DNA of 64,000 nt from Isurus oxyrinchus. Taxonomy: Eukaryota. The DNA lies in contig JANJGN010000052.1 of NCBI GenBank assembly GCA_026770705.1, forward strand, positions 2,666,001 through 2,730,000. The letters run 5' to 3'. The notes beneath the pieces were generated by a model. That model had not been told where the DNA came from and searched no databases. It saw only the letters and a program-made list of their open reading frames with translations. The position numbers and the translations under genes were made by a program. Every line of letters starts with the position of its first letter. Position 1 is the stretch's first letter. Positions 649 to 18,730 of this stretch are shown here, piece by piece.

Positions 649-959
649 GTACAAATTCATTACTGATCGGAACTCAGGGAATTGGATTCTTTCCTGGAGT
701 GAGGAAGTGAACATTTAATTTTAGAGAACAGGGTTAGTGATCACACAGAGAGTGAGTGATTAGCGAGTCAGAGAATTTAGCAAAAGCATAAGTCTCATAC
801 GGACTCGAAACACCAACTCTGTTTCTCTCTCCACAGATGCTGTCAGACCTGCTGAGTTTTTCCAGCATTTTCTGTTTGTGCATCAGAGAGCTTGTTTCAA
901 TAGGAATGACAGTGCATTTATATAGCACCTTTAATGCAGTAAAACATCCTTATTGCTTC

Positions 960-1435
960 ACAGGATTCCCCCACAAGGGGTAACATCCCCTCAGCATCCA
1001 CCCTGTCAAACCCCCCACCACCTCAGAATCTTATATGTTTCAATAAGATCACCTCTCATTCTTCTAAACTCCAATGGATACAGGGCCCAACCTGCTCAAC
1101 ATTTCCTCATAAGACAAACCCCCTTCATCCCAGGAATCAGCCCAGTGAACCTCCTCTGAGCTGCCTCCAATGCAGAGTCTATCCCTCCCTAAGTAAGGAG
1201 ACCAGAACTGTACACACTGCTCCTGATACAATCTCACCAACGCCCTGTACAGTTGTAGCAAGACTTCCCTCCTTTTATACTCCATCCCTTTGCAATAAAG
1301 GCCAACATTCCACTTGCCTTCCTCATTCCGTGGTGTTCCTGAATGCTGACTTTCTGTGATTCATGTACAAGGACACCCAGATCCCTCTGTGTCGCATTCT
1401 GTAGACTCTCTTCATTGAAGTAATATTCTGCTTTT
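960..1435 (-). mobile_element. CR1 LINE ORF2 3' fragment
   Basis: MEYKRREVLLQLYRALVR...CVQFWSPYL motif typical of the CR1 ORF2 C-terminus. Confidence 0.85.
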
Positions 1436-1468
1436 TGATGTCCTGTCCCCTCCCTTGTTGCCTTTCAG

Positions 1469-1758
1469 GAGTGACGTCAGAGGGATGGTCTATGAAGGCG
1501 CTGCCTCGGAGGGCCATCAGCAGCTCTTGTGTGGTTATTCCGTGTAGCTTTGACTTTCCTTCCCACTCTTACACAGCACTGCACGGAGCTTGGTATAAAT
1601 ATTGGTATAGATGGAAATATACCATCACATACACCAAAGATCCCAATTATGCGATGGCCACATTCGTGGGACGTGCTAAAATAATCGGCGACTTGGAAGG
1701 GAAGAATTGTTCGGTGGGGATTGACAGTCTCAGAGCTGAAGACAGTGACGTGTATTAC
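1469..1758 (+). pseudogene. Siglec/MAG/CD22-type V-set exon truncated at DSDVYY
   Basis: Acceptor tttcag ending 1468; W...SCVVIPCSFDFP...GAWY...GRAKIIGDLEGKNCSVGIDSLRAEDSDVYY, then runs into Gypsy gag with a stop at 1768-1770; no FR motif, G strand or downstream Ig exons found. Confidence 0.85.
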
Positions 1759-2900
1759 ACCCAATTCTAAATCTTTTCACCAATTAGTTGTCCTCATGAA
1801 GATGTGTTTTCAGCCGAAGCCGTGGGTAATAATGCAGAGGTTTAAGTTTAACTCCAGAGTAAGGGCCCAGGGAGAGTCCATCGCAACCTATACAGTGAAG
1901 TGGAAGCAGGTGACTGAGCACTGGGACCTCGGAGACACACTCAATGACATGTTGCGGGGCCGATTGGTTTGTGTCGTTCACCCCAACGCCATTCAGAGCC
2001 GTTTACTCGCAGAAGCCGACATCGATTTGAACCGCGCCATGGAAATAGCGCCAGGCATGGAATGTGCTGGGAGAGACTGGCGGGATCTACAGGAATATGC
2101 AACATGGCGCCAGTCCTCAGCTGGGACAGGAACCAACCACCGGGCGTGAGGCTCAAACTGGAGAGAGAGAGAGAGAGAGGGAGAGAGAGAGAGAGACAGC
2201 CGCCAAGCGAGAGACAGTCTCTGCCGCTCCAGAAACTAAAAGCCTTCGTGGGAGTATTTCAGCAGCAACTCCGAAGTTGGTCTGTTCTTGATGTGGTGGG
2301 GAGTGAGCACGTACCGGACACCTGCAGGTTCAAGGGGGCAGAATGCCATCACTGCCACAAGAAAGGGGTGGGTAATAAAGCAATGCAGGTTGAAATCGAG
2401 ACAGCCGATCAGGCAGTGCACCAACATGATGAAAGTGAATAATATCACAGAGCCTGAAGCTGCTGATACCGATGTCTATTCCCTGTCCAATGTCACAGTG
2501 GTAAAAACTGAACCTATAACCATCACAACCCAAGTGAATGGGCAGCCACTAGTAATGGGGCAGATACGGGAGCCTCAGACACAGTGGTGGAAGAGCCCAC
2601 ATTTAAACAGCTAAATGAAGGAACCCAGACGCTGAATTTAGAGCCAACAATGGATCAGCTGAAGACACACACTGGAGAATCCATACAGGGAAAGGACCTC
2701 ATCCCAGTACCTGTGTCCTACAGGCAGCAGACAGCCCAGCTTCCAGTGATCATAGCGACAGGTGAGGGCCCTAGTCTTCTGGGCCGAGACTGGTTCCAGA
2801 AAACCAAGCTCAGCTGCTCTGAAATGTTTCACTGGAGGAGTTGCTGAGTTGCTGGGGGAATATGAGAGTGTATCTCGGAATGAGTTTGAAGAATTGAAGC
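1759..2900 (+). mobile_element. Decayed Ty3/Gypsy gag-protease fragment
   Basis: KSFHQLV...QRFKFNSRVRAQGESIATY...LNDMLRGRLVC gag; CHHCHKKG zinc-knuckle remnant; DTGAS protease motif near 2563; frameshifted. Confidence 0.85.
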
Positions 2901-3145
2901 ATCCTCACAGGCTGCAAGTGTCCCTCAGGTCAGAGTTGGTTCCACTGGAAAATCCTGAAGAGAAAGAAAGCGAATTCTGTGCCGCTCTGAGCAAACTGAA
3001 GAAACAGTTGGCAGGGAAGACCCAACCATGTCCAATGTTCCAGGAGGAAGGCAAGAGATACAAGGAAGAGACTGAAGAGCTGAAGATTCAGCTGAATGAA
3101 ACCAAAGAGGCAGTTACAGTATCACAACAAGTTTACAGTGCAGAA

Positions 3146-3340
3146 GGAGGCCATTCAGCCCCTTGAGCCTGTTACACTTGAACAGGAGGAGGTCCATTCA
3201 GCCCCCTCAAGCCTGTTACACAGGAACAGGAGGAGACCCATTCAGCCCCATTGAGCCTGTTACACAGAAAAAGGACGAGGCCCATTCAGCCACTGTTGCC
3301 CATTACACAGGAACAGGAGGAGGCCATTCAGCCCCTTGTA
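3146..3340. repeat. ~38-bp tandem repeat (CR1 3'-tail derived)
   Basis: ggaggaggcccattcagccccctcaagcctgttacacaggaaca units; reverse complement of the array at 62930-63970. Confidence 0.85.
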
Positions 3341-4564
3341 GGGTGTGGTGGTGTGTGTCAGCTTCACCTGCGACTTCTGAGCCATCTGAATCACTCCCAC
3401 TCCCTGGGTTCTAGACCTTGGACTTATTCGGGGCTTGTCACAAAGTGCAGCAGACAACTGGTTTTGGTGCAAGACAAAAACTGAGTTTACTGAAGTCACA
3501 AATGAACTTATAACATTAGGATGACACTGAGATTATACAGACTTACAAAGTACACTGAGTTAAGAATAGGGAACACATGGCATAACGAGGGAGAATCACG
3601 CTACTAATGCCCTTACCCTTGTCCCACCCCCAAACCCTAACTAAATTGCACTAGGAGAGGTCAGGGGTCACGCTCACCAACCCAGGGTTCCTTGACAGGT
3701 GGAAATCCAGCCAGGTAAGCCGGTTGCAGTTTTGGGGGACGCTCTTTGTGTCCTCTGGGGCCTGTCATCCCCACGTGGTCCTGGTCTGTGGAATCTGTGA
3801 AGGGTCTTCAGTTGGGTGGAGGGCGCGGTTGTGGGTGGTCGATCTTCATGGAGGGCAGCAGTTGTGGCCTTGTTGTCTTCGGTTGAGCCTGCCACCCCGT
3901 GCCCCTCACCGTGATGTTGCCTGTGGGCCTGCAAACCTCCAGATCTCCTTGCTTAAACTCTGTTTCAACCACTCCCAACTGCTCACTGCCCTGTGTCAGC
4001 TTTCAACACTGCAACCCTTCTGCTGGCTGGTTTCTCTCCCAACTGACTGCCCACTTATACTGCCTTTCGAGTTTCTTATCGCAATCCAAATCAAGGTTCG
4101 TTCTTTGTTTGTCTTTGGTGGGCTTCCCCAGGTGATTGATATCTCGTTGTTGTTAATGGGCTCGCATGATGTTTATCATTGTCTTCCTGCCCAGTAACTA
4201 GTTTTGAACTGAAAGCCACTGTATGTGTTGAGTATTGATGGGTTCGCATAATTAAATTGCCGGCCTCAGAAGTTAGGAGCGATTATTGATGCAAGATTTA
4301 GATGGGCTTCAGTTGCGTGTGAAGTGAAGTCTTTCTCTGGGTTGATTGTATTAAAGGGAAGAATGCGTATTCTGTCTCCTCTCGTTGTCTGGTTTCAGGC
4401 CAAACATTCCACACTGCTCTCAATAAGCCCGCACATGTGCAGCCCCAGGCCTTCATGGGCCCAGCCTCCTGTCTGCAGGGTTTTCCACTTAACTCAGCAG
4501 TTTAAAGGTGCAAAAGTGATATCCTTGTTGATGATATGGAAAATGTGGGAATTTTGAGAACCCT

Positions 4565-4960
4565 TCAAGAGATAGGGAGGGTTGTGGGGGCTGGAGGAGG
4601 TTACAGGTATAGGGAGGGGTGTAGGGGTTGAAGGTGGCTACAGAGATGGGGAGGGTTGTGGGGGTTGGAGGTGGTTACAGATATAGGGAGGGGTGTAGGG
4701 GTTGAAGGTGGTTACAGAGATGGGGAGGGTTGTGGGGGTTGGAGGTGGTTACAGATATAGGGAGGGGTGTAGGGTTTGAAGGTGGTTACAGAGATGGGGA
4801 GGGTTGTGGGGGTTGGAGGTGGTTACAGATATAGGGAGGGGTGTAGGGGTTGAAGGAGGTTACAGAGATGGGGAGGATTGTAGAGGCAGGTGGAGGCTGC
4901 CTTAGGGAGGGTTGTAGGGGCTGGAGGAAAGGGACAGAGAGAGGAGGTTACAGATATATG
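4565..4960. repeat. 32-bp minisatellite (L2-derived)
   Basis: ggaggtggttacagagatagggagggttgtaggggttg units. Confidence 0.9.
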
Positions 4961-5109
4961 GAGGGAGACAGTCAGAGAGAGAGCCTCCAGGAGATAGAGA
5001 GCGATAGAGAGATTGAGAGACAGACAGAGACTGAGAGAGGGAGAAGAGAGAAGGAGAGTGAGAGAGAGAGAGAACAAGTGTGAAAGATGGTGGAAGGGAA
5101 GAGTGGGGA

Positions 5110-5465
5110 GGTGTTGGCCTGATGGTATTTTCACTGGACCAGTAATCCAGAGACCCAGTGTAATGCTCCTGGGACCCTGGTTAGAATCTCACCACAGCAG
5201 TTGGTGGAATTTCAATTCAATAAAAACCTGGAATTAAAAGTCCGATGATGACCAGGAAACCATTGCTGATTCTTGTATTTGGGTCACAAATGCCCTTTAG
5301 GGAGGGAAATCTGCTGTCCTTACCTGGTCTGGCCTACATGTGACTCCAGACCCACAGCAATGTGGTTCACTTTTAAAAAGTGGCCTCTGAACAAGGGCAA
5401 TTAGGGTTGGGCAATAAATGCTGGCCTAGGCAGTGATGTCCACATCACATGAAAGAATGAAATAA
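5110..5465 (+). mobile_element. Shark SINE-like element with LINE-shared 3' tail
   Basis: tRNA-like 5' part; 3' tail gggcaataaatgctggcctagg...cacatcacatgaaagaatg resembles the tail at 16560-16630. Confidence 0.6.
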
Positions 5466-6049
5466 AAGGACAGAGAGGGACAGACAGAGTCGAGAGACAC
5501 CCAGAATGAAAAAAACACAGTAAACACTGGAAAATAAACATTCTGGTCTGATCTGGTCTTGTATACCTTCAAATGGAACACCAGTAAAACAGGGAAATAA
5601 GAGTACTGGGCCAAACTGTTAGAGAGGGTCACATTTAGAGAGAGAGAGAGAGAGAGAGAAAGAGGGAGACACTGAAAGAGATAAGGACAAGGAAAGAAAG
5701 AGTGAGAGAGAGAGACAGACAGAGACACACAAAGAAGTAGAAAGAAAGTGATAGAGATGAAGCAGGAGAGAATGAGGAGAAAGATAGATAGATAGAGAGA
5801 GAGGATGGTAGAGAAAGAGAACGAGAGGAAAAGAGACAAAGGCAGAATGTGATGGAACACTGAATCCTTGTCTATGCGTTTTGAAATCCAGCCCAGAACT
5901 ATCATTGGAAGATTCAGCGAGTGTCCAGTACAGGGGACCCAGCCCAACCTTCTCATCCTGACCTTCCCAGTGGGGCTGAAGAGGGCAGAGAGGAAACCTT
6001 CCTCTGTTATTCTGTTGTCGAATAAACACAACAATTCTGGAACTCTGCC

Positions 6050-6670
6050 CTTTCTATCTCACGGATTAGAATATAAGGGGGCAGAGGTCATGCTTCAGTC
6101 TACATAAAGCCCTGGCTAGACCACACCTGGAGTCACTGTGAGACATTCTGGGCCCCACACCTTAGGACGGATATATTGACCTCGGAGGGAGAGCAGTGTC
6201 AGTTTACCAGAATGAGACCGGGACTCCAAGGGTTAAATCACAAGGAGAGATTAAACACAAACTCGGCTTGTATTCCCTGGAAGTTAGAATGTTAAGCAGG
6301 AGATTTGATGAAAGTTCGCATGATATTAAGGGGAACAGATCGGGGGCGATAAAGAGAAACCATTTCCCCTGGTTGGGGGGAGTCTGGGACTCGGGGTCAG
6401 AGCCTAAATAGGAGAGGCTGACCTTTCAGGAGTGAAATTAGGAAGCACAAAGTGTGGGAGAAATTTGGAACGGTCTTCCCCAAACTGAAACTGATGCACG
6501 ATCAAGTTGTTCATTTTAAACCTGTGAGACTGATAGATTTTTGTTATCCAAAGGTATTAAAGGAGATGGGACAAAGGCATATGGGGCTAGTTTGCAGATC
6601 AGCCATGATCTCATTGAATGGTGGAGCAGGCTCGAGGGGCCAAATGGCCTCCTCCTACCCTCATGTAATA
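6050..6670 (+). mobile_element. CR1 LINE 3' fragment
   Basis: GLEYKGAEVML..., ctagaccacacctggagt, 3' tail gatcagccatgatctcattgaatggtggagcaggctcgagggg. Confidence 0.8.
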
Positions 6671-7042
6671 GAAACTTACCTGTCAGAAGCCAGTTTATGT
6701 TGATGTGAGTCTGAGTCGATGACTGAACCCAGTTGGTGACTTGTTCCATACAAAGCAAGAACGTTCATGCCCTTCAATGTTCCTGGATAAACCATGAACA
6801 AAGCTGGTGACAGACAGTCTCCACATGGTAAACACTGACCGATCAACACATGACATGGCTGTTAACCCTTAAACCTCAGCGTAAATCAGTTCCCCCTCGA
6901 GGCCCCTTGTCCAAAATAAAAGCAACGCACACAATTTGTAAAATAGTAAGTGTAGCAATGAGAGGAGTAAGGGGTTAGGGGGCATGCGGTTCACCTGATT
7001 TGCCAACATAAGAACCAGCCCCTCTGTTTTTGCTATGTTGTG

Positions 7043-7256
7043 TTGCGTCAATATGAACACATATTTGCACAAGGTGAAGGGCGTTGCGGAGGGACTGATA
7101 GTTCTCGGCGCCAGACAGTCAATGTCCCAGTGACCTTACTGCTGGTCCCAGGCCAGTGGGACAGGGAACATCGACACTGCAATATCCAGAAATGGGTGTG
7201 ATACCACACAGCTACCCACCCGCGGCTGTCCCCTTCAAGTGTTTCAGGTATAAGAG
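7043..7256 (+). promoter_or_regulatory. HAMP: Putative hepcidin proximal promoter
   Basis: TATAAGAG 7249-7256 (77 bp upstream of the ATG); GGCGCC 7107-7112 overlapping CAGAC (BMP/SMAD-element-like); TTGCACAA 7065-7072 (C/EBP-like); TTGCGTCA 7043-7050 (C/EBP-ATF/CRE-like). Confidence 0.6.
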
Positions 7257-7325
7257 CAGGAAGCTCCTCTAGTTACAAACCAAAGCATCAAAGCAGAGCC
7301 AGAAGATCAGAAGAGACAGGCAGAG

Positions 7326-7418
7326 ATGGGAAGCTCCCAGATGAAATGGCGACTTGTCTTGTTCACTCTGACTTTGCTGCTCTCCCTGCAGCTGAGTCAC
7401 TTCTTCTCCTTGTCGAGG
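7326..7418 (+). CDS. HAMP: Hepcidin exon 1 (signal peptide; alternative in-frame ATG at 7341)
   Basis: Hydrophobic leader downstream of TATA; donor GTAAGC at 7419. Confidence 0.85.
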
Positions 7419-10400
7419 GTAAGCTAAGAGATGTCCCTCTGGGTGAGGTGTTTCTTGCACATGACACTACATCTACCACCCAGATAGACTGGTCACTTCC
7501 GCAGTTTGATATTATTATGTTCGTGCCTTTAATATTGTCGCCCTCTATGAATTTAACATCATTTCCTTCTGTCATTTCCCCTGAAATTCTCATTCTTGTT
7601 TTCAATCCCTCCTCAGCGACTCCCTATCTCTGTAACCTCCTCCAGCCCGTACAACCCTCCCTATCTCTGTAAACTCCTCCAGCCCCTACAACCCTCCCTA
7701 TCTCTGTAACCTCCACCAGACCTTACAACCCTCCCTATCTCTGTAACCTCCTCCAGCCACTACACCCCTCCCTATCTCTGTAACCTCCTCCAGCCGCTAC
7801 AACCCTCCCTATATCTGTAACCTCCTCCAGCCCCTACAACAATCCCCATCTCTGTAACTTCCTCCAGCCCCTACAACTGTCCCTATCTCTGTTACCTCCT
7901 CCAGCCCCTACAACACTCCCTATCTCCGTAACCTCCTCCAGCCCCTACAACCCTCCCTATCTCTGTAACCTCCTCCAGCCCCTATAAACCTCCCTATCTC
8001 TGTAACCTCCCCCAGGCCCCACAACCCTCATGATCACTGTAAACTCCTCTAGACCCTACAACCCTCCCTATCTCTGTAACCTCCTCCAGACCCTACAACC
8101 CACCCTATCTCTGTAACCTCCTCCAGGCCCCACGACCCTCAGAATCACTGTAACCTCCTCCAGCCCCTACAATGCTCATGAACTCTATAACGTCCTCTCC
8201 ACACTATAACTCTCCCTATCTCTGTAACCTACTGTGGCCCCTACAGCAGTATCTATTTTGGTAACCTCCTCCAGCCTCTACAACCCTCCTTACCTCTGTA
8301 ACCTCCTCCAGCCCCCACAACCCCCCCCATCTCTTTAACCTCCTACAGCCCCTACTCACCTCCCTATCTCTGTAACCTCCTACAGCCCCTACAACCTTCC
8401 CTATCTCTGTCACCTCCTACAGCCTCTAGAACCCTCCCTATCTCTGTTACCTCCTACAGCCTCTACAACCCTCCCTATCTCTGTAACCTCCTCCAGCCGG
8501 AACAACCCTACCTAAATCTCTGGTCTGAGTCTCACTCCAGGGAATTCAGTCCCATAACGTCGGTCAACACTCCGTGCTGAGGGAGTGCTGCACTGTCAGA
8601 GGGTCAGTAGTGTGGAAGTGTTGCACTATTGGAGGGACAGTACTGAGTGAGTGCTATACTGTCGGAGGTCAGTACTGAGGGAGTGCTGCTGTGTCGGAGG
8701 GTCAGTACTGAGGGAGCGCTGCACTGACGGAGGGACAATACTGTGGGAGTGCAGCACTATCGAAGGGTTAGTACTGAGGGAGTGCTGCTGTGTCGAAGGG
8801 TTAGTACTGAAATAGAGCTGCACTGACGGAGGGACAGTACTGAGGGAGCGCAGCACTATTGAAGGGTTAATACTAAGGGAGTGCTGCAGTGTCAAAGGGT
8901 TAGTACTGAGGGAGCACAACAATGTTGAATGAGACATTAAACTGAGTCCCCCGTCTGCCCTCTCGGGCGGGTGTGAAAGATCCCACAGCCACTATTTGGA
9001 GGAAGAGCAGGGGGTGTTCTCCCCGGTGTCCTGGCACCAATATTTATCCCTCACCCAACATCACCAAAAACAGATGATCTAGGCCATGATCACATTGCTA
9101 TTTGTGGGATCTTGCTGTGCACAAATCAGCTGCCACATTTCCTACAGTGTGAGTGCACTTCAAAAACATCCTTCAGTGGCTGTGAAATGCTTTGGGATGT
9201 GGTGAAAGGCGTTAGAGAAATGCAAGTCTGTCCTCCTCCCCCTCTCTCTCCTGTACCTCTCTCTCTCTCTCTCCCTCTCCCTCAATCCTCCTCTCACTTT
9301 CTCCCTGATAAATTCTTTCTTTTTGCAGGTTGACACTGCTTTAGGTTCTTCGACGATTGAGAAATCTGTGGATTCCCCGGACACGGTAGGTGGAAATTCA
9401 TTCCTTATTTTAAGGTTTCTCCCTGCTCGTTTCTTCCACAGAAAGTTTACTGATTTCAAGCTGATTTCAGTGGCAGTCTGTCTCGGTTATACTCAGGAGG
9501 CATGTTTGAAATCGAACCCCCCCCGCCCCCTTTTTTTGCAAAGCTGGGAAGAGACAATTCCAAGGAAGTGAACATATCCCCACAGGAATTTTAAATGTAA
9601 CCCACGCCGGGAATAGTGAGAGGGAGACTGATCCAGCCTGGGAGTGGGTTAAAGAGAGGCTGGGAGTCGAGAGTCGGAGAGAGGGATGGAATGGGGGAGG
9701 GAGGGATTGGAAGAGAGAGACAGAGAGTGGGACGGGGAGGGGTGAAAGGGAAAGAACATAGGTGGGAGAGAGTGACAGAGGGAGAAATTAAAGAGATGCA
9801 GAGTGAGGGAAAGTGAAAAGGGAAGAGAGATTGTCCAAGAGAGAGAAATTAACAGGGAAGGGAGAGTTACAGAGTGAGCGAAAGTTACAAAAATAGTGTG
9901 AGAGAGAGGGAGAGATACAGAGTGGGAGAAGGAGACAGGGGAGAGAGAGGGAGAGAGACAGGAAAAGGGAGAGAGGAGAGAAAGATTGGGAGAGAGGGCA
10001 ATTGAGAGGAAGAGTAGGAGAGAGAGAGACAGGGTGAGGAGGAGTGGATGAGAGGAAGAGAGAGAGAGATATGGAGCAGGAGAACACCTCCTCCGGTCCC
10101 GATGTTCCTCCAAAATCTCTGACATTACTGCATCTCCCGGGTCCCCCTGATTCCCATCGCTCCACCATTGGTGGCCGTGCCTTCAGCTGCCTGGGGCCCT
10201 GAGCTCCGGAATACCCTCCCTTAACCTCTCTGCCTCTCTCTCTCTCTCTCTCTCTCCTTTAAGACGCTCCTTAAAAACTGACATCTTTGACCAAGCTTTT
10301 GGTCACCTATCCCTAATATCTCCATATGTGACTCAGTGTTAGACTTCTCTCTGATTTACGCTCCGGTAATGTGGGCTGGGACATTTTGCAATGTCCGAGG

Positions 10401-11902
10401 CGCTGTGTAAATGCAAGTTGTGAGTGTTATGTGGAAGGGAGACCCCAGGTGGCAGTCAGTGCCAGAGACTGGAGTCATTGTGCGCAGACCGTATCTAATC
10501 TCTCCGAATGCACAATCGGTTTGACTGTCAGCCAAAGCACTTTTGATATTTGATCCTTCTAACTGTTTATAACCAGGCCTACATCAAACACCGAGAGGCT
10601 GGTTAATCAACAGACACCTTAGAGGATCGAGTGAAAGACAAAGAGGACTTGCATTTCTCTATAAAAACAAAGAAAACTGCGGATGCTGGAAATCCAAAAC
10701 AAAAACAGAATTACCTGAAAAAACTCAGCAGGTCTGGCAGCATTGGCGGAGAAGAAAAGAGTTGACGTTTCGAGTCCTCAGAAGGGTCATGAGGACTCGA
10801 AACATCAACTCTTGCATTTCTCTAGCGCCTTCCAACACATCAGGACGTCCCAAACTGTTTCGCAGACAATCAAGTGCTTTTTTTCTTTCATGTGAGGTCA
10901 CTGATGTACTGTGGGAAAAGAATCAGCCATTGGCGCACTGTAAGATCCCACAGACAGCAGCATGATAATGACCAGCGCACTCCCAGTACTTGCACTGCAA
11001 GTGTCAGTTCAGGGTGTCTGCTCGATTCTCTGCAACTCTCAGCTCTGAGTTAAAAGGACCACCAGGCGTAATTGAGAAATTACCGAGCTGTCGGAGGGTC
11101 AGTACCAGCGGGGGGGCAGGACAGTCGGAGGGTCAGTACTGAGGGGGTGCTGCATTGTCAGACAGTCAGTCTTGGAGTGCTGCACTGTCAGAGGGTCAGT
11201 ACCGGCGGGGGACTGCACAGTCGGAGGGTCAGTACTGAGGGGGTGCTGCATTGTCAGACGGTCAGTACTGAGGGAGTGCTGCACAGTCGGAGGGTCAGTA
11301 CTGAGGGGATGCTGCACTGTTGAAGGCGCTGTCTTTCAGATGAGATGTTAAACTGAGACAACATCTGCCCTCTCAGATGGATGTAGAGGATTCCATGGCC
11401 ACAATTTAAATGAAGTGCGTCAGGAGTTGGGGGTATGTGTGGAGGGGGTGGTGGGGGCTGGATGGGGTGGAGTTATGTCCGCTTTCCTGGGGCAAACATT
11501 TATCCCTCAACTGACATTGGTAAAAAACTGAAAATCGGGGCCATTATCACATTTCTGTTTGTGGGATCTTGCTGTGCGTGAATTGCCTGCTGCGTTTCCT
11601 ACATTACAGCGGTGAGCTCACTTCAGAAAAAGTCCTTCCTTCAGCTGTGGAACACTTTGGGCCATCCTGAGGAGGGGAAAGGCGCTATAGAAATGCGCCA
11701 TCCTCCTTCCAATGACGCGCCTGATTGAAATGATGCCTTCTTTCTTTCCGGAATGTTCTCACCTATTGTCCTCCTGCTTTTCCAGGGCTCCTTGCTGCAG
11801 CGCCAGAAGAGAATGGGCAGACAGCAGCTCTGCAGATTCTGCTGTAACTGCTGTAATTGGAGAGAACCAAATGAGACTTGTGGTCTCTGCTGTAGATATT
11901 AG
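7326..11902 (+). CDS. HAMP: Hepcidin precursor, 3 exons join(7326..7418,9329..9385,11786..11902), 88 aa
   Basis: MGSSQMKWRLVLFTLTLLLSLQLSHFFSLSR|VDTALGSSTIEKSVDSPDT|GSLLQRQKR-MGRQQLCRFCCNCCNWREPNETCGLCCRY*; both introns GT-AG phase 0; 8-Cys C-x2-CC-x-CC-xn-C-x2-CC pattern; furin site; next to Siglecs as HAMP is next to MAG/CD22 in mammals. Confidence 0.92.
7575..8510 (+). repeat. L2 ORF2 C-terminal fragment expanded into a 32-bp minisatellite (HAMP intron 1)
   Basis: EILILVF...PYLCNLLQP then many copies of ctccctatctctgtaacctcctccagcccctacaac. Confidence 0.85.
8570..9230 (+). mobile_element. DeuSINE (SacSINE1-like) with internally expanded 30-bp minisatellite
   Basis: cagtactgagggagtgctgcactgtcggagggt units followed by the Deu-like domain (aaagatcccac...gaagagcagggg...ctccccggtgtcctgg...atatttatccctca). 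Confidence 0.75.
9329..9385 (+). CDS. HAMP: Hepcidin exon 2 (prodomain, 57 bp)
   Basis: Long pyrimidine tract plus gcag acceptor; donor GTAGGT; phase 0/0, open frame; size typical of HAMP exon 2. Confidence 0.82.
10080..10420 (+). mobile_element. L2 LINE 3' end
   Basis: attggtggccgtgccttcagc...tttaagacgctccttaaa...tttgaccaagcttttggtcacct...ggcgctgtgtaaatgcaagttg. Confidence 0.7.
10662..10810 (-). mobile_element. Short Penelope-type end insertion with 14-bp target-site duplication and inverted repeat
   Basis: cttgcatttctcta repeated at 10648-10661 and 10811-10824; inverted arms 10757-10780 and 10790-10813. Confidence 0.7.
11085..11700 (+). mobile_element. DeuSINE with 30-bp minisatellite (HAMP intron 2)
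   Basis: 30-bp units then gtctttcagatgagatgttaaactgag...catttatccctcaac...gatcttgctgtgc. Confidence 0.7.
11786..11902 (+). CDS. HAMP: Hepcidin exon 3 (RQKR cleavage site + 29-aa mature peptide at 11813-11899)
   Basis: Acceptor cttttccag; 8 cysteines in hepcidin order; TAG at 11900-11902. Confidence 0.95.
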   Translation, partial: GSLLQRQKRMGRQQLCRFCCNCCNWREPNETCGLCCRY

Positions 11903-12199
11903 ACCCTGGCCTCATTCACGCAAGGTCATCCTGCACCATGCCACAGCCTCTCCCCTCCTTATCTACTGCTTAGCAATCTATTTCACACAGGCCCTGTTCA
12001 TTAATTCCAACTGAAACTTTACCTGCGTTTTACAGCAGGGAAAGAAGCCATTCGGCCCATCTGTTCCATGCTGGTGTTTCTGCTCCACACGAGTCTCCGC
12101 CCACCCCTTCTCCATCTCACCCCATCACCATATCCTTCTATTCATTTCTCCCTCGTGTGTTTATCCAGCTTCCCCTTAAATACATCGACACTATTCACC

Positions 12200-12590
12200 T
12201 CCCGTGACTGTGTTTGTGTCTGTCTTTATGAGCGTGTGTGTGTGACTGTCAATATGTGTGTGTCAATGTGAATGTGTGTGATTGTGTCAGCGTGTGTGTG
12301 TGTATGTGTGACTGTCAGTGCGTGTCAATGTGAATGTGTGTGATTGTGTCAGCGTGTGTGTGTGTGTGTGTGTGACTGTGTCAGTGTGTGTCAATGTGAA
12401 TGAGTGAGTGTGTCAGTGTGTCTGTGTGGGTGTGTGTGACTGTGTCAGTGTGTGTCGATGTGAATGAGTGAGTGTGTCAGTGTGTCTGTGTGGGTGTGTG
12501 TGACTGTGTCAGTGTGTGTCAATGTGAATGAGTGAGTGTGTCAGTGTGTCTGTGTGGGTGTGGGTGTGTGAGTGTGCAAGTGAATGTGTG
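12200..12590. repeat. Degenerate (TG)n microsatellite in the probable HAMP 3' UTR
   Basis: TG-rich tandem units. Confidence 0.85.
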
Positions 12591-12787
12591 AGGAATCTTA
12601 TGACTAAGTCATTTGAATGGATGTTACTGGGGTTAATGATAGTTAAAATTCAGAGAGATGTAAAGCGGGCTCCTGATTTTGCTGCTTTATGCTCCCGGGC
12701 ACAGATTGACCCCGACAATGTGTTCATGATTCACCATCATCTTGTCGGGACTTTAATTGTAAAGATGATGATTTGTAAAAAAAAATG

Positions 12788-12793
12788 AATAAA
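12788..12793 (+). terminator. Candidate HAMP polyadenylation signal
   Basis: First AATAAA seen after the HAMP stop, followed by T/GT-rich sequence. Confidence 0.45.
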
Positions 12794-12999
12794 CAACTTT
12801 TGTCTTCACAAAGAGTCTGGCTTGGTATTTCAGGCTACTTGTCTCTCCCTCACCCTCCCCCCCCCACCATGCCCCCCACACCAGGGAACAATTGTCCCCC
12901 CTTCCTCTGAAGTTCGGGGTAAAGATCAGCTTTGTTCAATGCAAGCTGTTCCGACATCGAGAACGTTGTTACAAATATCTCACAAAGGGCACACGCCAT

Positions 13000-13135
13000 G
13001 ATAGCCCACTTTCAACAGATTTTACCAGTTGACCAGGTTGAAAACCTTTTCATAAACCACAACGTAGGTGTTCAATTCTTGCTGCTGTTTGCTTAATGCT
13101 CTCATAACTGCTATAACCTCTCTAGTTCCACTACA
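13000..13135 (-). mobile_element. Degenerate RTE-like reverse transcriptase fragment
   Basis: GTREVIAVMR...VVVYEKVFNLVNW* resembles RT GTRDAI...DYEKAFDRVDW. Confidence 0.45.
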
Positions 13136-14429
13136 TAACAACACAAACATAAATAAACAGAAGCAGGAGTAGGCCTTTTGGCCCCCCAAGCCTGCTTGTC
13201 CATTTAATTTGAACCTGGCTCCTGCTGAAAGTTATTTAAGTTGAAGCGATAAAGCCATCAGGTGCAAGGATTAAAATGTAAGCAAAGGAAAAATAATACT
13301 TAGAGATGAGAGTTAAAATCAGTTTCTGTCAAGTATCATAGTGAGGCCATTGCTCTGGATTCCTTCTTTCCAGAGTGAAGGGTTTGAAACTAGGAGTCAC
13401 ATTCAGCAGCTGCATTGTCTTCTCTAGTCGACTGTTTGGAGGTTGCCTGTAGATGTGAATCAGCAGGTCAGCAGCTTTGAGGAGTGAGTGAAGGTCCCTT
13501 TTATTTACAGGATCTGCCACAGGATGTGCAGGAATATTCCTGCTGAATCCCCCATCCTTGTATTCATGAAGGTTTTGAAACTGGAAGTCATATTCAGCAG
13601 CTGCAATGGCCTTTGTAGTCAACTGTCTGGAGGTTGCCTGTACAGGTGGACTCGGCATGTCAACAGCTTTGTTGGGCGGGGGACACGGGTAGTGAAGGTC
13701 CCTTTTCTTTAAAGGCTCTGCCAGTGCAAAACTTGATGATCCTGGGTCAAAATCATGTAACTCCCTCCCCAACAGCACTGTGGATGTGCCCTATGGATGT
13801 TCCTTGGCTTCGACAAGCAGCCTACCAGCTCTACTCTCAATTCCTCTTCACACTTGCTTCCTTCCTCCTCTGGTCTTTACTTTGTTATAGTGTTAGTGTC
13901 CGCTCTGCCTTTTTTGTTGCTTTCCCAATTCTTCCCACCAACTCTCTCTGGCTTGATCCTGCTCTGTGCTCATCTCATTGGTTTGAGTTTCTATCCGTTC
14001 ATTGACCTGGTGTAATCTGAAACTGGTGCAATCAGGTAGGGGTGGGGGGGTTGGCGCTGGCCGTGGGTGGTGATACACGGCTACCTTTTTACCAAAATTC
14101 TTTCACGGGATGTGGACAGCGTTTGTTACCTGTTTCTGACTGACCCCTTGAGAAGGGGGTGCTGAGCTGCCTTTTCGAAGTGCTGCAGTTCGCCTGGTTG
14201 ACTGGTCTGTGGCGGGTTTTGATATAACTCAGTAGCTTGCTCGGCCATTTCAGGGGCCAGTTAAGAGTCAACCACATTGCTGTGGGTCAGGAGTCACACG
14301 TAGGCCAGAATGGGTAAGGACGGCAGGTTTCCTTCCCCAAAGGGCATTAGTGACCCAGATGGGTTTTTGCAACAATTGGCCTTAGTTTCATGGTCACCAT
14401 TACTGAGACTAGCTTCGCATTCCAGATGT

Positions 14430-16385
14430 CACATCCAGTCATGGACAATTAAACAACTCACTGGAGGAGGAGGCTCCACAAATATCCCCATCCTCAATGA
14501 TGGAGGAGCCCAGCAGATCAGTGCAAAAGACAAGACTGAAGCATGCGCAACAATCTTCAGCCAGAAGTGCTGAGTGGGTGATCCATCTCGGCCTCCTCCT
14601 GAGGTCCCCAGCATCAGAGATGCCAATCTTTAGCCAATTCGATTAATTCCACGTGATATCAAGAAAGGGCTGAAGGCACTGGATATTGCAAAGGCTCCAG
14701 GCCCTGACAATATTCTGGCAATAGTACTGAAGACTTGTGCTCCAGAACTTGCTGCGCCCCTAGCCAAGCTTTTCTGGAATTTTCTAGTACAGCTGCAACA
14801 CTGGCAACTACCCGGCTATGAGGTACGTCCTGTACACAAAAAGCAGGACAAATCCAACCCAGCCAATTCCCCAGCAGTCTATTCTTGATCATTACTAAAG
14901 TGATGGAAGGGGTCATCAACAGCGCTTGCAAGCAGCACCTGCTTACCAAGAACCTGCTCACTGACGCTCAGTTTGTGTTCCACCAGGATCATTCAGCTCC
15001 TGGCCTCATTACAGCCTTGGTTCAAACATGCACAAATGAGCTGAACTCCAGAGGTGAGAGGGACTGCCCTTGACATCAAGGCAGCATTTGACTGAGTGTG
15101 GCAAATCAAGGAGCCCGAGCAAAACTGGAGTCAATGGGAATCGGGGGAAAACTCTCCGCTGCTTGGAGTCATACCCAGCACAAAGGACGATGGTTGTGAT
15201 TGTTGGGGGTCAATCATCTCAGTTCCAGGACATCACTGCAGGAGTTACTCAGGGTAGTGTCCTAGGCTCAAACATCTTCAACTGCTTCATCAATGACCTT
15301 CCTTCCATCATAAGGTCAGAAGTGGGGATGTTTGCTGATGTTTGCACAATGTTCAGCACCATTCACGGCTCCTCAGATACTGAAGCAAGTTATGTCCAAA
15401 TGCAGCAAGACCTGGACAACATCCAGGCTTGGGCTGACAGGTGACAAGTAACATTCATGCCACACAAGTACCAGGCAATGACCAGCTCCAACAAGAGAGA
15501 ATCTAATTGAAGGTGCAGAAAATTTGGATTTATGTTCAAGAGCCAGCCAGGACCAGCAGCTAGGGCGCCAAAGCGTACACATCCTTACGTGAAAACTTAA
15601 AAACCTGTACTAAGGGCTCAGTTGGAAATTTGCAATGAGGAAATGGGAGACACACACACAAGGACACAGGGTGACTCAATCAAGAAATGGGGAAGGTTAT
15701 TTCACACCGTCCGATGGCCTTGAACCACATCCAGTCAGCCTCCGGTAACCTTTTGTATCGAACAAACATAGATTCTTTGCTGTCTCAAAAGGACAATAGC
15801 CAGTCTCTGCCCTGTAATTACTGAACAAGAACACAATTATCAGCCCACCGGAGGGTCATTGTGCTGTGGCCTTTGTCTAACTAATACCATTACCTTGTAA
15901 CTGAGAGTAAAAAATATATAAACTGTGCTCATTTGAACCTCGGTGGAGAAGCGCCTGTACTGCCCAGCGTTTGCTCCCCACATGCGTAATAAAGGAACCA
16001 CTTGAATATTGCATCTGGAGTCCGAGTGTTGAAATTTTGTACCAGAATATCCCACAGACCATTCATAACCATCGCCCCTTGGCATTCAATGGCATTACCA
16101 TCAATGAATCCCCCAATATCAACATCCTGGGAGTTACCATTGAGCAGAAACTGAACTGGACCAGCCATATAAACACTGTGGCTGCAAGAGCAGGTCAGAG
16201 GCTGGGAACCCTGCAGACAGTAACTCACCTCCTGACTCCCCAAAGCCTGTCCACCATCTACAACGCACAAGTCAGGAGTGTGATGGAATACTCTCCACAT
16301 GCCTGGATGAGTGCAGCTCCAACAACACTCAAGAAGCTCGAAACCATCCAGGACAAAGCAGCCCGATTGATTGGCTCCCCTTCCA
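14430..16385 (+). mobile_element. Non-LTR retrotransposon ORF2 (RT) fragment, interrupted by a solo LTR
   Basis: WTIKQLTGGGGSTNIPIL...; AGVTQGSVLG...FINDLP...MFADVC RT motifs; resumes at 16066 (INILGVTIEQKLNWTSHI...VRSVMEYSP). Confidence 0.85.
15508..16065 (+). mobile_element. Solo LTR (~558 bp)
   Basis: TG...CA termini, taat/taac 4-bp target duplication splitting the LINE ORF, internal TATATAAA (~15915) followed by AATAAA (~15988). Confidence 0.75.
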
Positions 16386-17884
16386 CAGAGCTAGATAGAT
16401 TCTTGATTAACAATGGGGTGAAAGGTCATTGGGGGTAGGCAGGAATGTGAGGTTGAGGTGACAATCAGATCAGCCATGATCTTACTGAATGGCGGAGCAG
16501 GTTCGAGGGGCTGAGTGACCTACTCCTGATCCTAACTCAGATATCCATATGTTCTCAAAGGCAAATGGGGATGGGCAACAAATACTGGCCTAGTCAGCGA
16601 CACCAACATCCCTGAAATGAATAAGAAAAAAATGTATCAATCAATTAAATTTATTGATTAATCGAATTGAAATTCCTCCAGCTGCCGTGGTGGGATTTGA
16701 ACCCGTGCCTTCAAAGCATTCACCTGGGCCTCTGGATCACTGGCCTAGTGCCATTCCCATGGTGCGACTGTCTGCTATCATCATGGCTCTTTCACATCGA
16801 TGTGGAAGTCCTGATAACAGAAGCATTGGACGAGGTACAGAAAGGTGACAAATCAGGAGCTCCATTGCTCAATATGAACGGATAATAAAGATAAATGAAC
16901 ATAAACCTTCCAGTCGCTAATTAGGGAGTCACTGTGGAACCCATGAGTCCCTCGCAGCGCTATTGCAACCTTCTGGATCCCCAGTAGGGGACTCGGGGTG
17001 CAGCTGTGTCTTCCTCATCATTTGGAAAAGCCGGAATTGTTCGGGTGCCCCTTCAAACAGGCCGAAGATGCAGTGGGTGATGTCTCCCACAGGCCCTGGG
17101 AGACCTCCCCTGCCAATTTGTTTTGTAGCTTATTCTTCAACTGCGACATTGGATCAGCTTGAAAAAGGGTGGGGCTGAGGCAATGCCACCAGGTAAGCGT
17201 CTATTCCCTCACACGTCACCCCCCCCCCACCCCCGTAACCATCACAGTCCCTCCCATCGTGCTGGAGGAGCATAATGTGCACATTCCCCTCCTTCCAATC
17301 AGTCTCCTCCCTTCCTCTCTAATCCTTGATCTTATTGTGTTCGGGGTTGACATCCCAGTCCTCCTCCCTAGACTGTCTGATGTTGACATCCCAATGCCCC
17401 ATGTAGACCTGACCTCTCTCCAACTAGAGGTCCATTGTACTGTGACTTACAGAGACCACCGGCCCCCCTCGATTCCCACCCCACCCCTACTCTCTATATT
17501 ACCTGCTCCCCACTGACAGGCTGCAGATGCCTCCCCTGACTGGGATTGTGCCACCTGCGGCCTAGTATCAAGCCACCCACCCCCAGGACCGACGTGTGTG
17601 AGGGACTGACCACGTCCTGCACACCATGCTGGGCACCACCAACCCAGGACTGCCAGGCTCTCCCCACCACACTGGACTGGGACTAGAATAGGCGTGCCAA
17701 GCACAGCTCTCTAAATCGTGGCGCAGACCCACAGCACTCGCAATGTTTTGTGGCCCGAATCCTTGCTGAGGAACTGCCCAGCACTAAAATCAAAACAACT
17801 GCAGATGCTGGAAATCCAAAACAGAAACAGAAACAGAAATACCTGGAAAAACTCAGCAGGTCTGGCAGCATCGGCAGAGAAGAA

Positions 17885-18730
17885 CTGAGGTAGTGCGGCA
17901 CTGTCGGAGGTTATGAACTGAGGGAGAGCTGCACTGTCGGAGGGTCTGAGCTGAGGGAGTGCTGCACGGTCGGAGGGTCTGAGCTGAGGGAGTGCTGCAT
18001 GGTCGGAGGGTCTGAACTGAGGGAATGCTGCACTTTCGGAGGGTTTGAACTGAGGGAGTGCTGCACTGTCGGAGGCTCTGAAATGAGGGAGTGCTGCACT
18101 GTTGGAGGGTTTGAACTGAGGAAGTGCTGCACTGTCGGATGGTTTGAACTGAGGAAGTGCTGCACTGTCGGATGGTTTGAACTGAGGAAGTGCTGCACTG
18201 TCGGATGGTTTGAACTGAGGGATTGCTGCACTGTCGGAGGGTCTGAACTGAAGGAGTGCTGCACTGTCGGAGGGTTTGAACTGAGGGAGTGCTGCACTGT
18301 CGGAGGGTTTGAACTGAGGGAGTGCTGCACTATCGGAGGGTATGAACTGAGGGAGAGCTGCACTGTCGGAGGGTTTGAACTGAGGAAGTGCTGCACTGTC
18401 GGAGGGTCTGAACTGAAGGAGTGCTGCGCTGTCGGAGGGTCTGAACTGAGGGAGTGCTGCACTGTTGGAGGGTCTGAAATGAGGGAGTGCTGCACTGTCA
18501 GAGGGTCTGAACTGAGAAAGTGCTGCACTGTCAGAGGGTCTGAACTGAGAGAGTGCTGCACTGTCGGAGGTTCTGAACTGAGGGAGTGCTGCACTGTCGG
18601 AGGGTTTGAACTGAGGGAGTGCTGCACAGTCGGAGGGTCTGAACTGAGGGAGTGCTGCTCTGTCGGAGGGTTTGAACTGAGGGAGTGCTGCATTGTCGGA
18701 GGGTCTGATCTGAGGGAGTGCTGCACTGTC
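17885..18730. repeat. 30-bp minisatellite variant (gtcggagggtctgaactgagggagtgctgcact)
   Basis: About 28 tandem units; source of spurious long ORFs. Confidence 0.95.

What the first reader, a model, noticed from the sequence alone, without database searches (positions are those of the whole stretch)
11813..11899. Atypical mature hepcidin: 8-residue loop with N-glycosylation sequon and no His3 N-terminus
Seen: MGRQQL-C-RF-CC-N-CC-NWREPNET-C-GL-CC-RY (29 aa, 4 Arg, 2 Glu). Established: human hepcidin-25 has a 4-residue loop (HRSK) at this position. Its N-terminal DTHFP (QSHLS in many fish HAMP1) carries the ferroportin-binding and His3 metal-binding determinants. Here the loop is doubled, contains N-E-T and Trp, and the peptide has no His. 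Inference: a structurally novel, possibly glycosylated hepcidin. It may be antimicrobial-specialised like teleost HAMP2, or co-evolved with a divergent shark ferroportin.
Basis: partly seen in the sequence, partly recalled or inferred. Interest (0 to 1): 0.8.

Follow-up and report, generated by a model that had tools for sequence, protein, structure and literature searches.

The report
Long-loop shark hepcidin gene copy
This is the last exon of a real, spliced shark gene for a hepcidin-type peptide; its long loop is shared with a more standard basking-shark hepcidin, and what sets this copy apart is a changed front end, so it is probably a defence-type sister of the iron hormone.

Summary
It has eight Cys spaced 2,0,1,0,8,2,0, no His, and one N-E-T sequon. 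It passes Pfam Hepcidin (31.6 bits, cut-off 27).

It is exon 3 of a three-exon gene: 7326-7418, 9329-9385 and 11786-11902. Contigs of two runs of one sample carry both exon junctions.

The loop is 4 residues longer than in human hepcidin and 3 longer than in bass hepcidin. It is not peculiar to this peptide. The basking-shark protein XP_078389754.1, named "uncharacterized", aligns without gaps. It has the same 29-residue frame and 8-residue loop, but an S-H-L-S front end with His3.

One contig of the RNA-like run X1 reads on into an S-H-L-S-type peptide. Signal and pro parts are 52/59 identical to the basking-shark protein. Non-Cys mature residues are 4/21 identical.

A sequon sits at the same loop place in sea bass Hamp2.

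Best reading: a diverged, defence-type paralogue rather than the iron hormone. No function was tested.

This scan has already met near-identical copies many times on other DNA of the same genome.

The parts
7249..7255 (+). TATA-like box about 30 bases before the first transcript letters seen
   Evidence: Read from the sequence. A contig of run X4 lies on 7282-7417 with 0 other letters (table 8, record 9). Promoter function is inferred, not tested.
7282..7325 (+). 5' untranslated part of exon 1 (minimum extent)
   Evidence: Start of the X4 contig, record 9. The true start was not mapped, because contigs cannot show ends.
7326..7418 (+). Exon 1 coding part: 31 codons, start ATG and a hydrophobic signal peptide
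   Evidence: Translation. The GT donor is at 7419. The GT..AG joint 7417->9328 (cut +1) is seen in 11 contigs of X1 and 1 of X4. 29 of 31 residues are identical to P0003.
9329..9385 (+). Exon 2: 19 codons of propeptide
   Evidence: AG at 9327-9328 and GT at 9386. 16 of 19 residues are identical to P0003.
10577..10731 (+). Minor cryptic exon (155 bases) inside intron 2. It carries an in-frame stop, so the isoform is non-productive.
   Evidence: X1 joints 9384->10576 (1 contig, depth 844.4) and 10728->11783 (1 contig, depth 509.6), both GT..AG.
11786..11902 (+). Exon 3 coding part: end of the propeptide, the convertase site, the mature peptide and the TAG stop
   Evidence: AG at 11784-11785. The joint 9384->11785 (cut +1) is seen in 8 contigs of X1 and 1 of X4. 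Pfam Hepcidin scores 31.6 bits.
11801..11812 (+). R-Q-K-R, a furin-type RX(K/R)R proprotein convertase site directly before the mature peptide
   Evidence: Translation. The motif is named as typical of hepcidins in the abstract of PMC3325200 (listing). P0003 has R-E-K-R at the same place. Cleavage itself is inferred.
11813..11899 (+). Predicted 29-residue mature peptide with eight Cys (the finding)
11855..11878 (+). 8-residue loop between the fifth and sixth Cys
   Evidence: Cys spacing. A 4-column gap is needed against human and bass hepcidin. P0003 has the same length.
11870..11878 (+). N-E-T sequon in the loop
   Evidence: It aligns with N-M-S of bass hepcidin. Occupancy was not tested.
11903..12100 (+). 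3' untranslated region (minimum extent; it runs to the end of the stretch laid)
   Evidence: An X4 contig lies on 11866-12100 with 2 other letters, and X1 shows high depth up to 12100. No AATAAA or ATTAAA signal lies in 11900-12600. The end was not mapped.

Best explanation
Window 11813-11899 is the mature-peptide part of an intact, spliced, three-exon hepcidin-family gene of a shark. It is one copy of a multi-copy family that lies among Siglec/MAG-like genes.

Inferred pathway. The roughly 88-codon precursor enters the secretory route through the exon-1 signal peptide. A furin-type convertase cuts after R-Q-K-R. A 29-residue peptide is released and folds into the four-disulfide hepcidin hairpin.

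The 8-residue loop at the hairpin tip is part of a scaffold shared by shark hepcidins and is not an oddity of this copy. This copy has replaced the S-H-L-S front end (His3 and a hydrophobic residue 4), which is the end that is buried in ferroportin. It has also turned a Lys-rich loop into a neutral or acidic one that carries an N-E-T sequon.

I therefore read it as a fast-evolving defence or immune-type paralogue, working like teleost Hamp2. The S-H-L-S-type paralogue would be the ferroportin ligand.

Shown: the sequence, the family membership, the splicing, the shared loop length, and the contrast between a conserved prepro part and a diverged mature part. Inferred: the processing, the fold, the lack of ferroportin action and the defence role.
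For: Family: Pfam Hepcidin scores above its cut-off. All 8 Cys are in register with the solved human and bass hepcidins.

Gene: canonical GT..AG joints lie exactly at the predicted exon borders. Exon 1-2 is seen in 11 contigs of X1 and 1 of X4. Exon 2-3 is seen in 8 contigs of X1 and 1 of X4. X1 exon bins show depths of 155,394-779,225, against about 750-18,000 in non-repeat intron bins.

Shared scaffold: BLASTP of exon 3 against P0003 (XP_078389754.1, Cetorhinus maximus) gives 19/37 identities with 0 gaps, E 2e-13. P0003 has Cys spacing 2,0,1,0,8,2,0 and a 29-residue mature part with S-H-L-S at residues 2-5. P0003 scores 44.8 bits on Pfam Hepcidin, with 35 residues on 31 profile positions.

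Paralogue in the same sample: one X1 contig follows the window up to 11815 and then reads letters that translate to an S-H-L-S-type start. Those letters are absent from the window at up to 3 mismatches.

Divergence pattern: the prepro parts are 52/59 identical to P0003, the mature part 12/29, and the non-Cys mature residues 4/21. The Fisher test gives p = 1.3e-8.

Analogy: sea bass Hamp1, which has the Q-S-H-L-S front end, lowers ferroportin, while Hamp2 does not (PMC5665920, abstract and passages). HAMP2 mature codons are positively selected, while HAMP1 and mammalian ones are not (PMC3325200, passages). The hepcidin loop is 'highly variable' and 'largely extracellular', with both termini buried in ferroportin (PMC8235187, section 5).

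Locus: Siglec/MAG-like V-set and C2-set exons lie at 21135-26667 (-).
Against: No function was tested.

The peptide keeps Leu6, Cys7 and Phe9, the 6-residue length of the front segment and the C-terminal CC-x-x end. Some ferroportin binding is therefore possible.

The S-H-L-S-type transcript in X1 rests on one contig's 30 printed letters. Logan contigs can be chimeric between paralogues.

The comparison with P0003 mixes species divergence and paralogy.

The runs were laid as contigs at 90% likeness or more. Earlier notes report many near-identical copies. The transcripts therefore cannot be assigned to this copy. The deepest exon 2-3 junction contig in X1 (depth 13,927.5, against 2,474.9 for the window's form) differs from the window by one letter at 9384, changing Thr to Met.

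The runs are only guessed to be RNA, and their tissue is unknown.

Net charge is only about +1.4, which is low for a membrane-active peptide.
Confidence: 0.6

Rival explanations
1. It is still an iron hormone. The long-loop peptide without His binds shark ferroportin, perhaps as a weaker or differently tuned ligand, or as the ligand of the second ferroportin that some cartilaginous fish have. The very high expression would then reflect hormone output.
For: The front segment keeps its length of 6 residues before Cys7, together with Leu6, Cys7 and Phe9. The C-terminal end also keeps its form. The loop is extracellular and variable in the ferroportin complex, so its length need not matter (PMC8235187 section 5). 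The same review says some cartilaginous fish have a second ferroportin with another residue at the Cys326 place.
Against: His3 and the hydrophobic residue 4 are replaced by Arg and Gln. An S-H-L-S-type hepcidin with the same scaffold exists in a related shark, and probably in the same sample. Sea bass Hamp2, which also lacks the motif, does not regulate ferroportin. A ferroportin without the Cys326 thiol is expected not to bind hepcidin.
Confidence: 0.18
2. It is a glycosylated hepcidin. The N-E-T sequon in the enlarged loop is occupied, which gives the peptide a glycan-dependent function or a longer half-life.
For: N-E-T lies in a secreted peptide, and NxT is the stronger sequon type (the second point is general knowledge, recalled). 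The Lys-rich loop of P0003 has no sequon, so the sequon is a derived feature of this class.
Against: A sequon (N-M-S) at the aligned loop place exists in sea bass Hamp2 and in the solved bass hepcidin, which are handled as plain peptides. The site is 10 residues from the C-terminus and directly precedes a disulfide Cys. Both features tend to lower occupancy (recalled general knowledge, not tested). No paper in the library holds any of four phrases for glycosylated hepcidin.
Confidence: 0.15
3. This particular copy is a silent or decaying duplicate. The spliced transcripts come from sister copies.
For: Earlier notes of this scan describe many near-identical copies, some of them broken or chimeric (I did not check these). 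The deepest exon 2-3 junction contig in X1 differs from the window at 9384.
Against: The reading frame, both splice-site pairs, the convertase site and all eight Cys are intact. Contigs with the window's own junction letters exist: 8 in X1 and 1 in X4. An X4 contig matches exon 1 and its 5' UTR with 0 other letters.
Confidence: 0.1

Closest known systems
Cetorhinus maximus (basking shark) LOC144671611 isoform X2, XP_078389754.1, named 'uncharacterized protein' (P0003)
   Same: 88 residues with the same three-part layout. The signal peptide is 29/31 identical, exon 2 is 16/19 identical, and an RX(K/R)R site lies at the same place. The mature part is 29 residues with identical Cys spacing, including the 8-residue loop. 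A reverse-transcriptase-like piece used by its isoform X3 also lies about 3 kb downstream of the gene in the window, at 14987-15092.
   Different: Its mature part starts M-S-H-L-S with His3. Its loop is Lys-rich and has no sequon. Its charge is +4.5, against +1.4 here. Only 4 of 21 non-Cys mature residues are shared.
Teleost Hamp2 / bass hepcidin (sea bass Hamp2 peptide in PMC5665920; PDB 1s6w)
   Same: The core after the first Cys (C-R-F-C-C-N-C-C) is identical, as are P-N in the loop, C-G and the C-C-R end. A sequon lies at the aligned loop place. There is no Q-S-H-L-S front end. Hamp2 is multi-copy in some fish and fast evolving (PMC3325200 passages; PMC6240063 title and abstract only, listing).
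   Different: The loop is 5 residues, not 8. The Hamp1/Hamp2 split is described for teleosts, so the likeness is most likely parallel evolution or a retained ancestral core rather than orthology (inference). Antimicrobial action is shown for Hamp2 and not for this peptide.
Iron-regulatory hepcidin (human hepcidin-25, PDB 1m4f/2kef/6wbv; teleost Hamp1)
   Same: Eight-Cys framework, six residues before the first Cys, a three-exon gene, a convertase site, and a position beside MAG/Siglec-type genes. The human HAMP-MAG neighbourhood is recalled, not tested.
   Different: The loop is 4 residues in human and 5 in sea bass Hamp1, against 8 here. The D-T-H or S-H-L-S front end with His3 is absent here.

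Membership tests
Hepcidin family (Pfam PF06446) | Match to the family profile above the curated cut-off | tested here: met
   31.6 bits against a cut-off of 27, E 2e-7, on the exon-3 translation.
Hepcidin family (Pfam PF06446) | Eight Cys in the framework C-x2-CC-x-CC-loop-C-x2-CC | tested here: met
   Spacings are 2,0,1,0,8,2,0. All eight Cys are in register with human and bass hepcidin. The loop length of 8 lies outside the 4-5 of those two but equals that of P0003.
Hepcidin family (Pfam PF06446) | Three-exon prepropeptide gene, with a signal peptide in exon 1 and an RX(K/R)R site before a C-terminal mature peptide in exon 3 | tested here: met
   Exons at 7326-7418, 9329-9385 and 11786-11902. 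GT..AG joints are seen in contigs. R-Q-K-R lies at 11801-11812. The exons were never joined for any search.
Hepcidin family (Pfam PF06446) | Four-disulfide beta-hairpin fold | tested here: inconclusive
   AlphaFold2 gave low-confidence helical models with one sequence (pLDDT 71.4) and with a two-row alignment (pLDDT 57.5). These are unusable. Disulfide pairing cannot be tested with these tools.
Iron-regulatory hepcidin (HAMP / teleost Hamp1 type) | Front end with His3 and a hydrophobic residue 4 (D-T-H-F-P or Q-S-H-L-S type) | tested here: not met
   The mature peptide starts M-G-R-Q-Q-L and has 0 His. The motif is as printed for sea bass Hamp1 in PMC5665920.
Iron-regulatory hepcidin (HAMP / teleost Hamp1 type) | Binds ferroportin and lowers iron export; induced by iron and inflammation in liver | not testable with these tools
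   The tissue and condition of the runs are coded or unknown.
Iron-regulatory hepcidin (HAMP / teleost Hamp1 type) | Genomic neighbourhood of HAMP (beside MAG/CD22-type Siglec genes in mammals; recalled) | tested here: met
   V-set exons at 22133-22600 (-) and 26170-26667 (-) score 51.2 and 44.4 bits on V-set, and 38.9 and 41.2 bits on Ig_CD22. A C2-set exon lies at 21135-21536 (-). The best solved match is myelin-associated glycoprotein, E 3e-13. USF2 was not looked for.
Defence-type hepcidin (works like teleost Hamp2) | Lacks the iron-hormone front end while a paralogue keeps it | tested here: met
   This peptide lacks it. P0003 keeps it. One X1 contig reads into an S-H-L-S-type start. The last point rests on a single contig.
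Defence-type hepcidin (works like teleost Hamp2) | Mature peptide diverges much faster than the signal and pro parts | tested here: met
   52/59 identical against 4/21 non-Cys identical, measured against P0003, p = 1.3e-8. This is protein level only, with one comparison and no dN/dS.
Defence-type hepcidin (works like teleost Hamp2) | Orthology to teleost hamp2 | not tested
   No tree could be built, because only one relative was retrieved. I do not file the gene as a member of teleost Hamp2, only as working like it.
Defence-type hepcidin (works like teleost Hamp2) | Antimicrobial or immune-modulating activity | not testable with these tools
   This needs MIC and infection assays.

The most novel reading that the evidence does not exclude
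Sharks build all their hepcidins on a 29-residue scaffold with an 8-residue loop. Independently of teleosts, they have split them into two classes. One is an S-H-L-S iron-hormone class. The other is a multi-copy, very highly expressed class embedded in Siglec gene arrays. This second class gave up the ferroportin-binding end and gained an occupied N-glycan on the loop. It would be the first glycosylated hepcidin. Its partner might be something other than the classical ferroportin, such as the second, Cys326-less ferroportin of cartilaginous fish, or a lectin receptor.
Probability: 0.15. Interest if true: 0.65.

Novelty: new variant of a known kind. Interest (0 to 1): 0.4.

Why it matters
Hepcidin is the master iron hormone, and cartilaginous fish are the earliest lineage in which its ferroportin binding site appears (PMC8235187). 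Two results bear on this. A standard-front-end shark hepcidin and this diverged copy share an 8-residue loop. The hormone-type and diverged-type peptides also appear to co-exist. Together these suggest that the split into iron-regulating and other hepcidins happened more than once in vertebrates. They also suggest that loop length is free to vary while both termini are constrained. That gives a natural test set for which parts of hepcidin ferroportin reads. The gene is not annotated as hepcidin: the nearest public protein is called 'uncharacterized'. I found no paper on shark hepcidin sequences, so annotation pipelines and iron-biology comparisons currently miss it.

Tried and rejected
Protein and structure searches that gave nothing usable:
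- The big HMMER search with the 38-residue exon-3 translation gave 1 protein at E <= 0.001. It is P0001, a 577-residue repetitive translation with no hepcidin features. Not even known hepcidins reached the threshold. The search has no power for so short a query, and its blank says nothing.
- The word search with the open frame around exon 3 found no candidate sharing three words, both with region 18-57 and without a region. This is consistent with this class not being in that collection, but it is no proof.
- The protein atlas search on exon 3 gave a best score of 0.76, a plant hypothetical protein. That is nothing. On P0003, three hepcidin clusters scored 0.91-0.93, which only confirms the family.
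- AlphaFold2, run twice, gave helical, low-confidence models that contradict the solved hepcidin fold. I rejected them and ran no fold search on them.

Searches within the window:
- My first Ig-exon heuristics found nothing useful. A plain list of open frames followed by Pfam did find Ig exons.
- Ten open frames scanned gave only a weak RVT_1 hit (15070-15441) and a weak sub-threshold coiled-coil hit.
- A second hepcidin exon in this window is rejected. The Cys framework occurs once. tblastn with P0003 finds only the three exons. The S-H-L-S-type letters are absent.

Papers:
- 'hepcidin' plus 'shark' gave 208 papers, 20 listed.
- 'cartilaginous fish' gave 47 papers, 20 listed.
- 'Chondrichthyes' gave 11 papers, all listed.
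- Genus and common-name searches are.
- Only the nurse-shark plasma proteome (PMC9207270, one passage) says that hepcidin was detected in shark plasma.
- I read listings only for the rest, so a paper among the unlisted hits cannot be excluded.
- Pieces of the peptide occur in 0 papers. Four phrases for glycosylated hepcidin occur in 0 papers. 'N-glycosylation site' occurred 0 times in each of the 12 hepcidin papers listed.
- PMC3832898 mentions hepcidin only in its reference list.

Considered and rejected: that the loop is an assembly or frame artefact. The frame is open, the Cys stay in register, and P0003 has the same length.
Full report
WHAT IS THERE. A TAG stop follows at 11900-11902. The peptide has eight Cys at positions 7, 10, 11, 13, 14, 23, 26 and 27, spaced 2,0,1,0,8,2,0. 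It has four Arg, two Glu, no His, no Lys, one Trp, and one sequon (N-E-T from residue 20). Its pI is 8.18 and its charge about +1.4. A hepcidin-type Cys framework occurs once in the six frames of the window and in 0 of 200 shuffles. The exon-3 translation passes Pfam Hepcidin at 31.6 bits, against a cut-off of 27.

THE GENE. Reading upstream gives a three-exon gene, all in phase 0.
- Exon 1 is 7326-7418. It holds the ATG and 31 codons with a hydrophobic signal-peptide core. A TATA-like box lies at 7249-7255.
- Exon 2 is 9329-9385, with 19 codons.
- Exon 3 is 11786-11902. Nine propeptide codons end in R-Q-K-R, and the 29 mature codons follow.
- All four splice sites are GT..AG.
Every search and count was made exon by exon, and the joined step was left out.

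TRANSCRIPTION. Twelve runs were listed for window 7200-12100. I laid four of them as contigs, at 90% likeness or more.
- The exon 1-2 joint (7417->9328, cut +1, GT..AG) is carried by 11 contigs of X1 and 1 of X4.
- The exon 2-3 joint (9384->11785, cut +1) is carried by 8 contigs of X1 and 1 of X4.
- In X1 the exon bins have summed depths of 155,394 to 779,225. Non-repeat intron bins are mostly about 750 to 18,000.
The spliced form therefore exists and looks abundant.
Caveats:
- The runs are only guessed to be RNA, and their tissue and species are coded.
- Contig depth is a poor measure of expression.
- Near-identical sister copies could supply the contigs. The deepest exon 2-3 junction contig in X1 (13,927.5, against 2,474.9 for the window's own letters) differs at 9384, which changes the last codon of exon 2 from Thr to Met.
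- X5 (organism B) shows that same variant junction at depth 24.1. X6 shows none.
- A minor isoform uses a 155-base cryptic exon at 10577-10731 that carries an in-frame stop.

THE LOOP. HMMER alignments to solved hepcidins keep all eight Cys in register and need a 4-column gap in the loop. The alignment to bass hepcidin 1s6w has E 0.13. The alignment to human hepcidin (1m4f, 2kef, 3h0t, 4qae, 6wbv) has E 7 and is weak. The loop is 8 residues here, 5 in bass and 4 in human. On the Pfam profile, 33 residues cover 29 positions.

The decisive comparison came from my last word search. It returned two basking-shark proteins of LOC144671611.
- P0003 (XP_078389754.1, isoform X2, 88 residues, 'uncharacterized protein') scores 44.8 bits on Pfam Hepcidin.
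- It aligns to exon 3 without any gap, 19/37 identities, E 2e-13.
- Its mature part is also 29 residues, with the identical Cys spacing and an 8-residue loop.
- That mature part starts M-S-H-L-S with His3. Its loop is Lys-rich without a sequon. Its charge is +4.5.
The long loop therefore belongs to a scaffold shared by at least two shark hepcidin types, one of them with a standard-looking front end. It is not what makes this peptide special.

WHAT IS SPECIAL. Compared with P0003, exon by exon:
- Exon 1 is 29/31 identical.
- Exon 2 is 16/19 identical.
- The pro part of exon 3 is 7/9 identical.
- Together these prepro parts are 52/59 identical.
- The mature part is 12/29 identical, and only 4/21 outside the Cys.
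The contrast is strong (Fisher p = 1.3e-8). A conserved prepro part with a hypervariable mature peptide is what is described for teleost HAMP2. There, mature codons are positively selected, while those of HAMP1 and mammalian HAMP are not (PMC3325200, passages). This is one protein-level comparison that mixes species and paralogue divergence. A codon test was not possible.

A STANDARD-TYPE TRANSCRIPT IN THE SAME SAMPLE. One X1 contig follows the window up to 11815, the codon of the first mature residue. It then reads 30 printed letters that translate to S-H-L-S-I-C-M-Y-C-C. Those letters are not in this window at up to 3 mismatches. tblastn with P0003 finds only the three exons here. The evidence is a single contig, which could be a chimera at a shared word. 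It agrees with P0003 and with earlier notes of this scan.

THE SEQUON. N-E-T is there. HMMER aligns the P-N of this loop with the P-N of bass hepcidin, whose loop reads P-N-M-S-G. The sea bass Hamp2 peptide printed in PMC5665920 and PMC8502971 has the same N-M-S. A loop sequon is therefore not new in hepcidins. Whether any of them is occupied I could not learn. Four phrases for glycosylated hepcidin occur in no paper of the library. The site is 10 residues from the C-terminus and next to a disulfide Cys. From general knowledge (recalled) this lowers the odds of occupancy but does not exclude it.

SURROUNDINGS. Downstream on the minus strand lie Siglec/MAG-like exons.
- V-set exons lie at 22133-22600 and 26170-26667. 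They score 51.2 and 44.4 bits on V-set, and 38.9 and 41.2 bits on Ig_CD22.
- A C2-set exon lies at 21135-21536.
- A weak V-set-like frame lies upstream at 1405-1767 (+), at 21.2 bits, below the cut-off.
- The best solved match of the first V-set exon is myelin-associated glycoprotein, E 3e-13.
This fits the HAMP-MAG neighbourhood of mammals, which I recall and did not test. A reverse-transcriptase-like piece at 14987-15092 matches the odd third exon of basking-shark isoform X3 at 22/24 and 11/14 residues. The duplicated unit therefore seems to include it.

HOW IT MOST LIKELY WORKS. The inferred steps are signal-peptide removal, a furin-type cut after R-Q-K-R, and folding into the four-disulfide hairpin with an enlarged tip. 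In the ferroportin complex the hepcidin loop is 'highly variable' and 'largely extracellular', while both termini are buried (PMC8235187, section 5, read whole). The loop is therefore unlikely to decide the function, and the front end is likely to. Here His3 and the hydrophobic residue 4 are replaced by Arg and Gln. Sea bass Hamp1, with Q-S-H-L-S, lowers ferroportin and Hamp2 does not (PMC5665920, abstract and passages). A title seen only in a reference list says that the motif confers the iron-regulatory activity.

I therefore read this gene as a defence or immune-type paralogue working like teleost Hamp2 (confidence 0.6). I rate the rivals as follows: retained ferroportin action 0.18, a glycan-dependent role 0.15, and this copy being silent 0.1.

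PRINT AND DATABASES. I found no paper that gives a shark hepcidin sequence. For one search I saw only 20 of 208 listed, and supplements were closed. PMC9207270 (one passage) reports hepcidin among nurse-shark plasma proteins without an annotated whale-shark orthologue. [quoted passage not shown] The word searches with exon 3 found nothing in 5.8 billion clusters. The big HMMER search had no power.

EARLIER NOTES OF THIS SCAN. Follow-ups on other DNA of the same genome describe many near-identical long-loop copies, two of them 0.5 and 1.4 Mb upstream on the same piece. I did not check those loci. They lower the news value of this one copy and warn that transcripts cannot be assigned to it.

VERDICT. 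This is a real member of the hepcidin family and a new variant of a known kind. Its novelty lies in the shark-wide long-loop scaffold and in a diverged, multi-copy class without His. It does not lie in a unique loop or sequon.

Noticed in passing
window 11815 (loose end of one X1 contig): A contig follows the window to the first mature codon and then reads letters that translate to an S-H-L-S-type hepcidin start. Those letters are absent from this window. This is a second, standard-looking hepcidin transcript in the same sample.
   Followed up: partly
window 9384: The deepest exon 2-3 junction contig of X1 (depth 13,927.5) has T instead of C here, changing Thr to Met at the last codon of exon 2. 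X5 shows it too, at depth 24.1. It is probably a sister copy or an allele.
   Followed up: no
window 10577-10731: A 155-base cryptic exon inside intron 2, flanked by AG and GT, is used by single X1 contigs on each side. It has an in-frame stop and overlaps a highly repeated element.
   Followed up: partly
window 14987-15092 and 15070-15441: A reverse-transcriptase-like open frame (RVT_1, 24.2 bits, below the cut-off) matches the third exon of basking-shark LOC144671611 isoform X3 (P0002) at 22/24 and 11/14 residues. The same element lies downstream of the hepcidin gene in both sharks and is mis-spliced into an annotated isoform there.
   Followed up: partly
window 21135-21536 (-), 22133-22600 (-), 26170-26667 (-), 1405-1767 (+): These are Siglec/MAG-like Ig exons: two V-set exons that also hit Ig_CD22, one C2-set exon, and a weak V-set-like frame upstream. 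The best solved match is myelin-associated glycoprotein.
   Followed up: partly
window 32268-32528 (+) and 47779-48039 (+): Two 87-residue open frames differ at only a few residues and lie about 15.5 kb apart. This hints at a tandem segmental duplication inside the window.
   Followed up: no
window 12200-12600: A long GT-rich array of roughly 64-base units lies directly downstream of the gene. No AATAAA or ATTAAA signal lies in 11900-12600, so the transcript's 3' end is unmapped.
   Followed up: no
window 7560-8500, 8540-8900 and 11080-11330: The introns are filled with short tandem-like repeat families that draw very deep contig piles from all four runs. These are genome-wide repeats and not part of the gene.
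   Followed up: no
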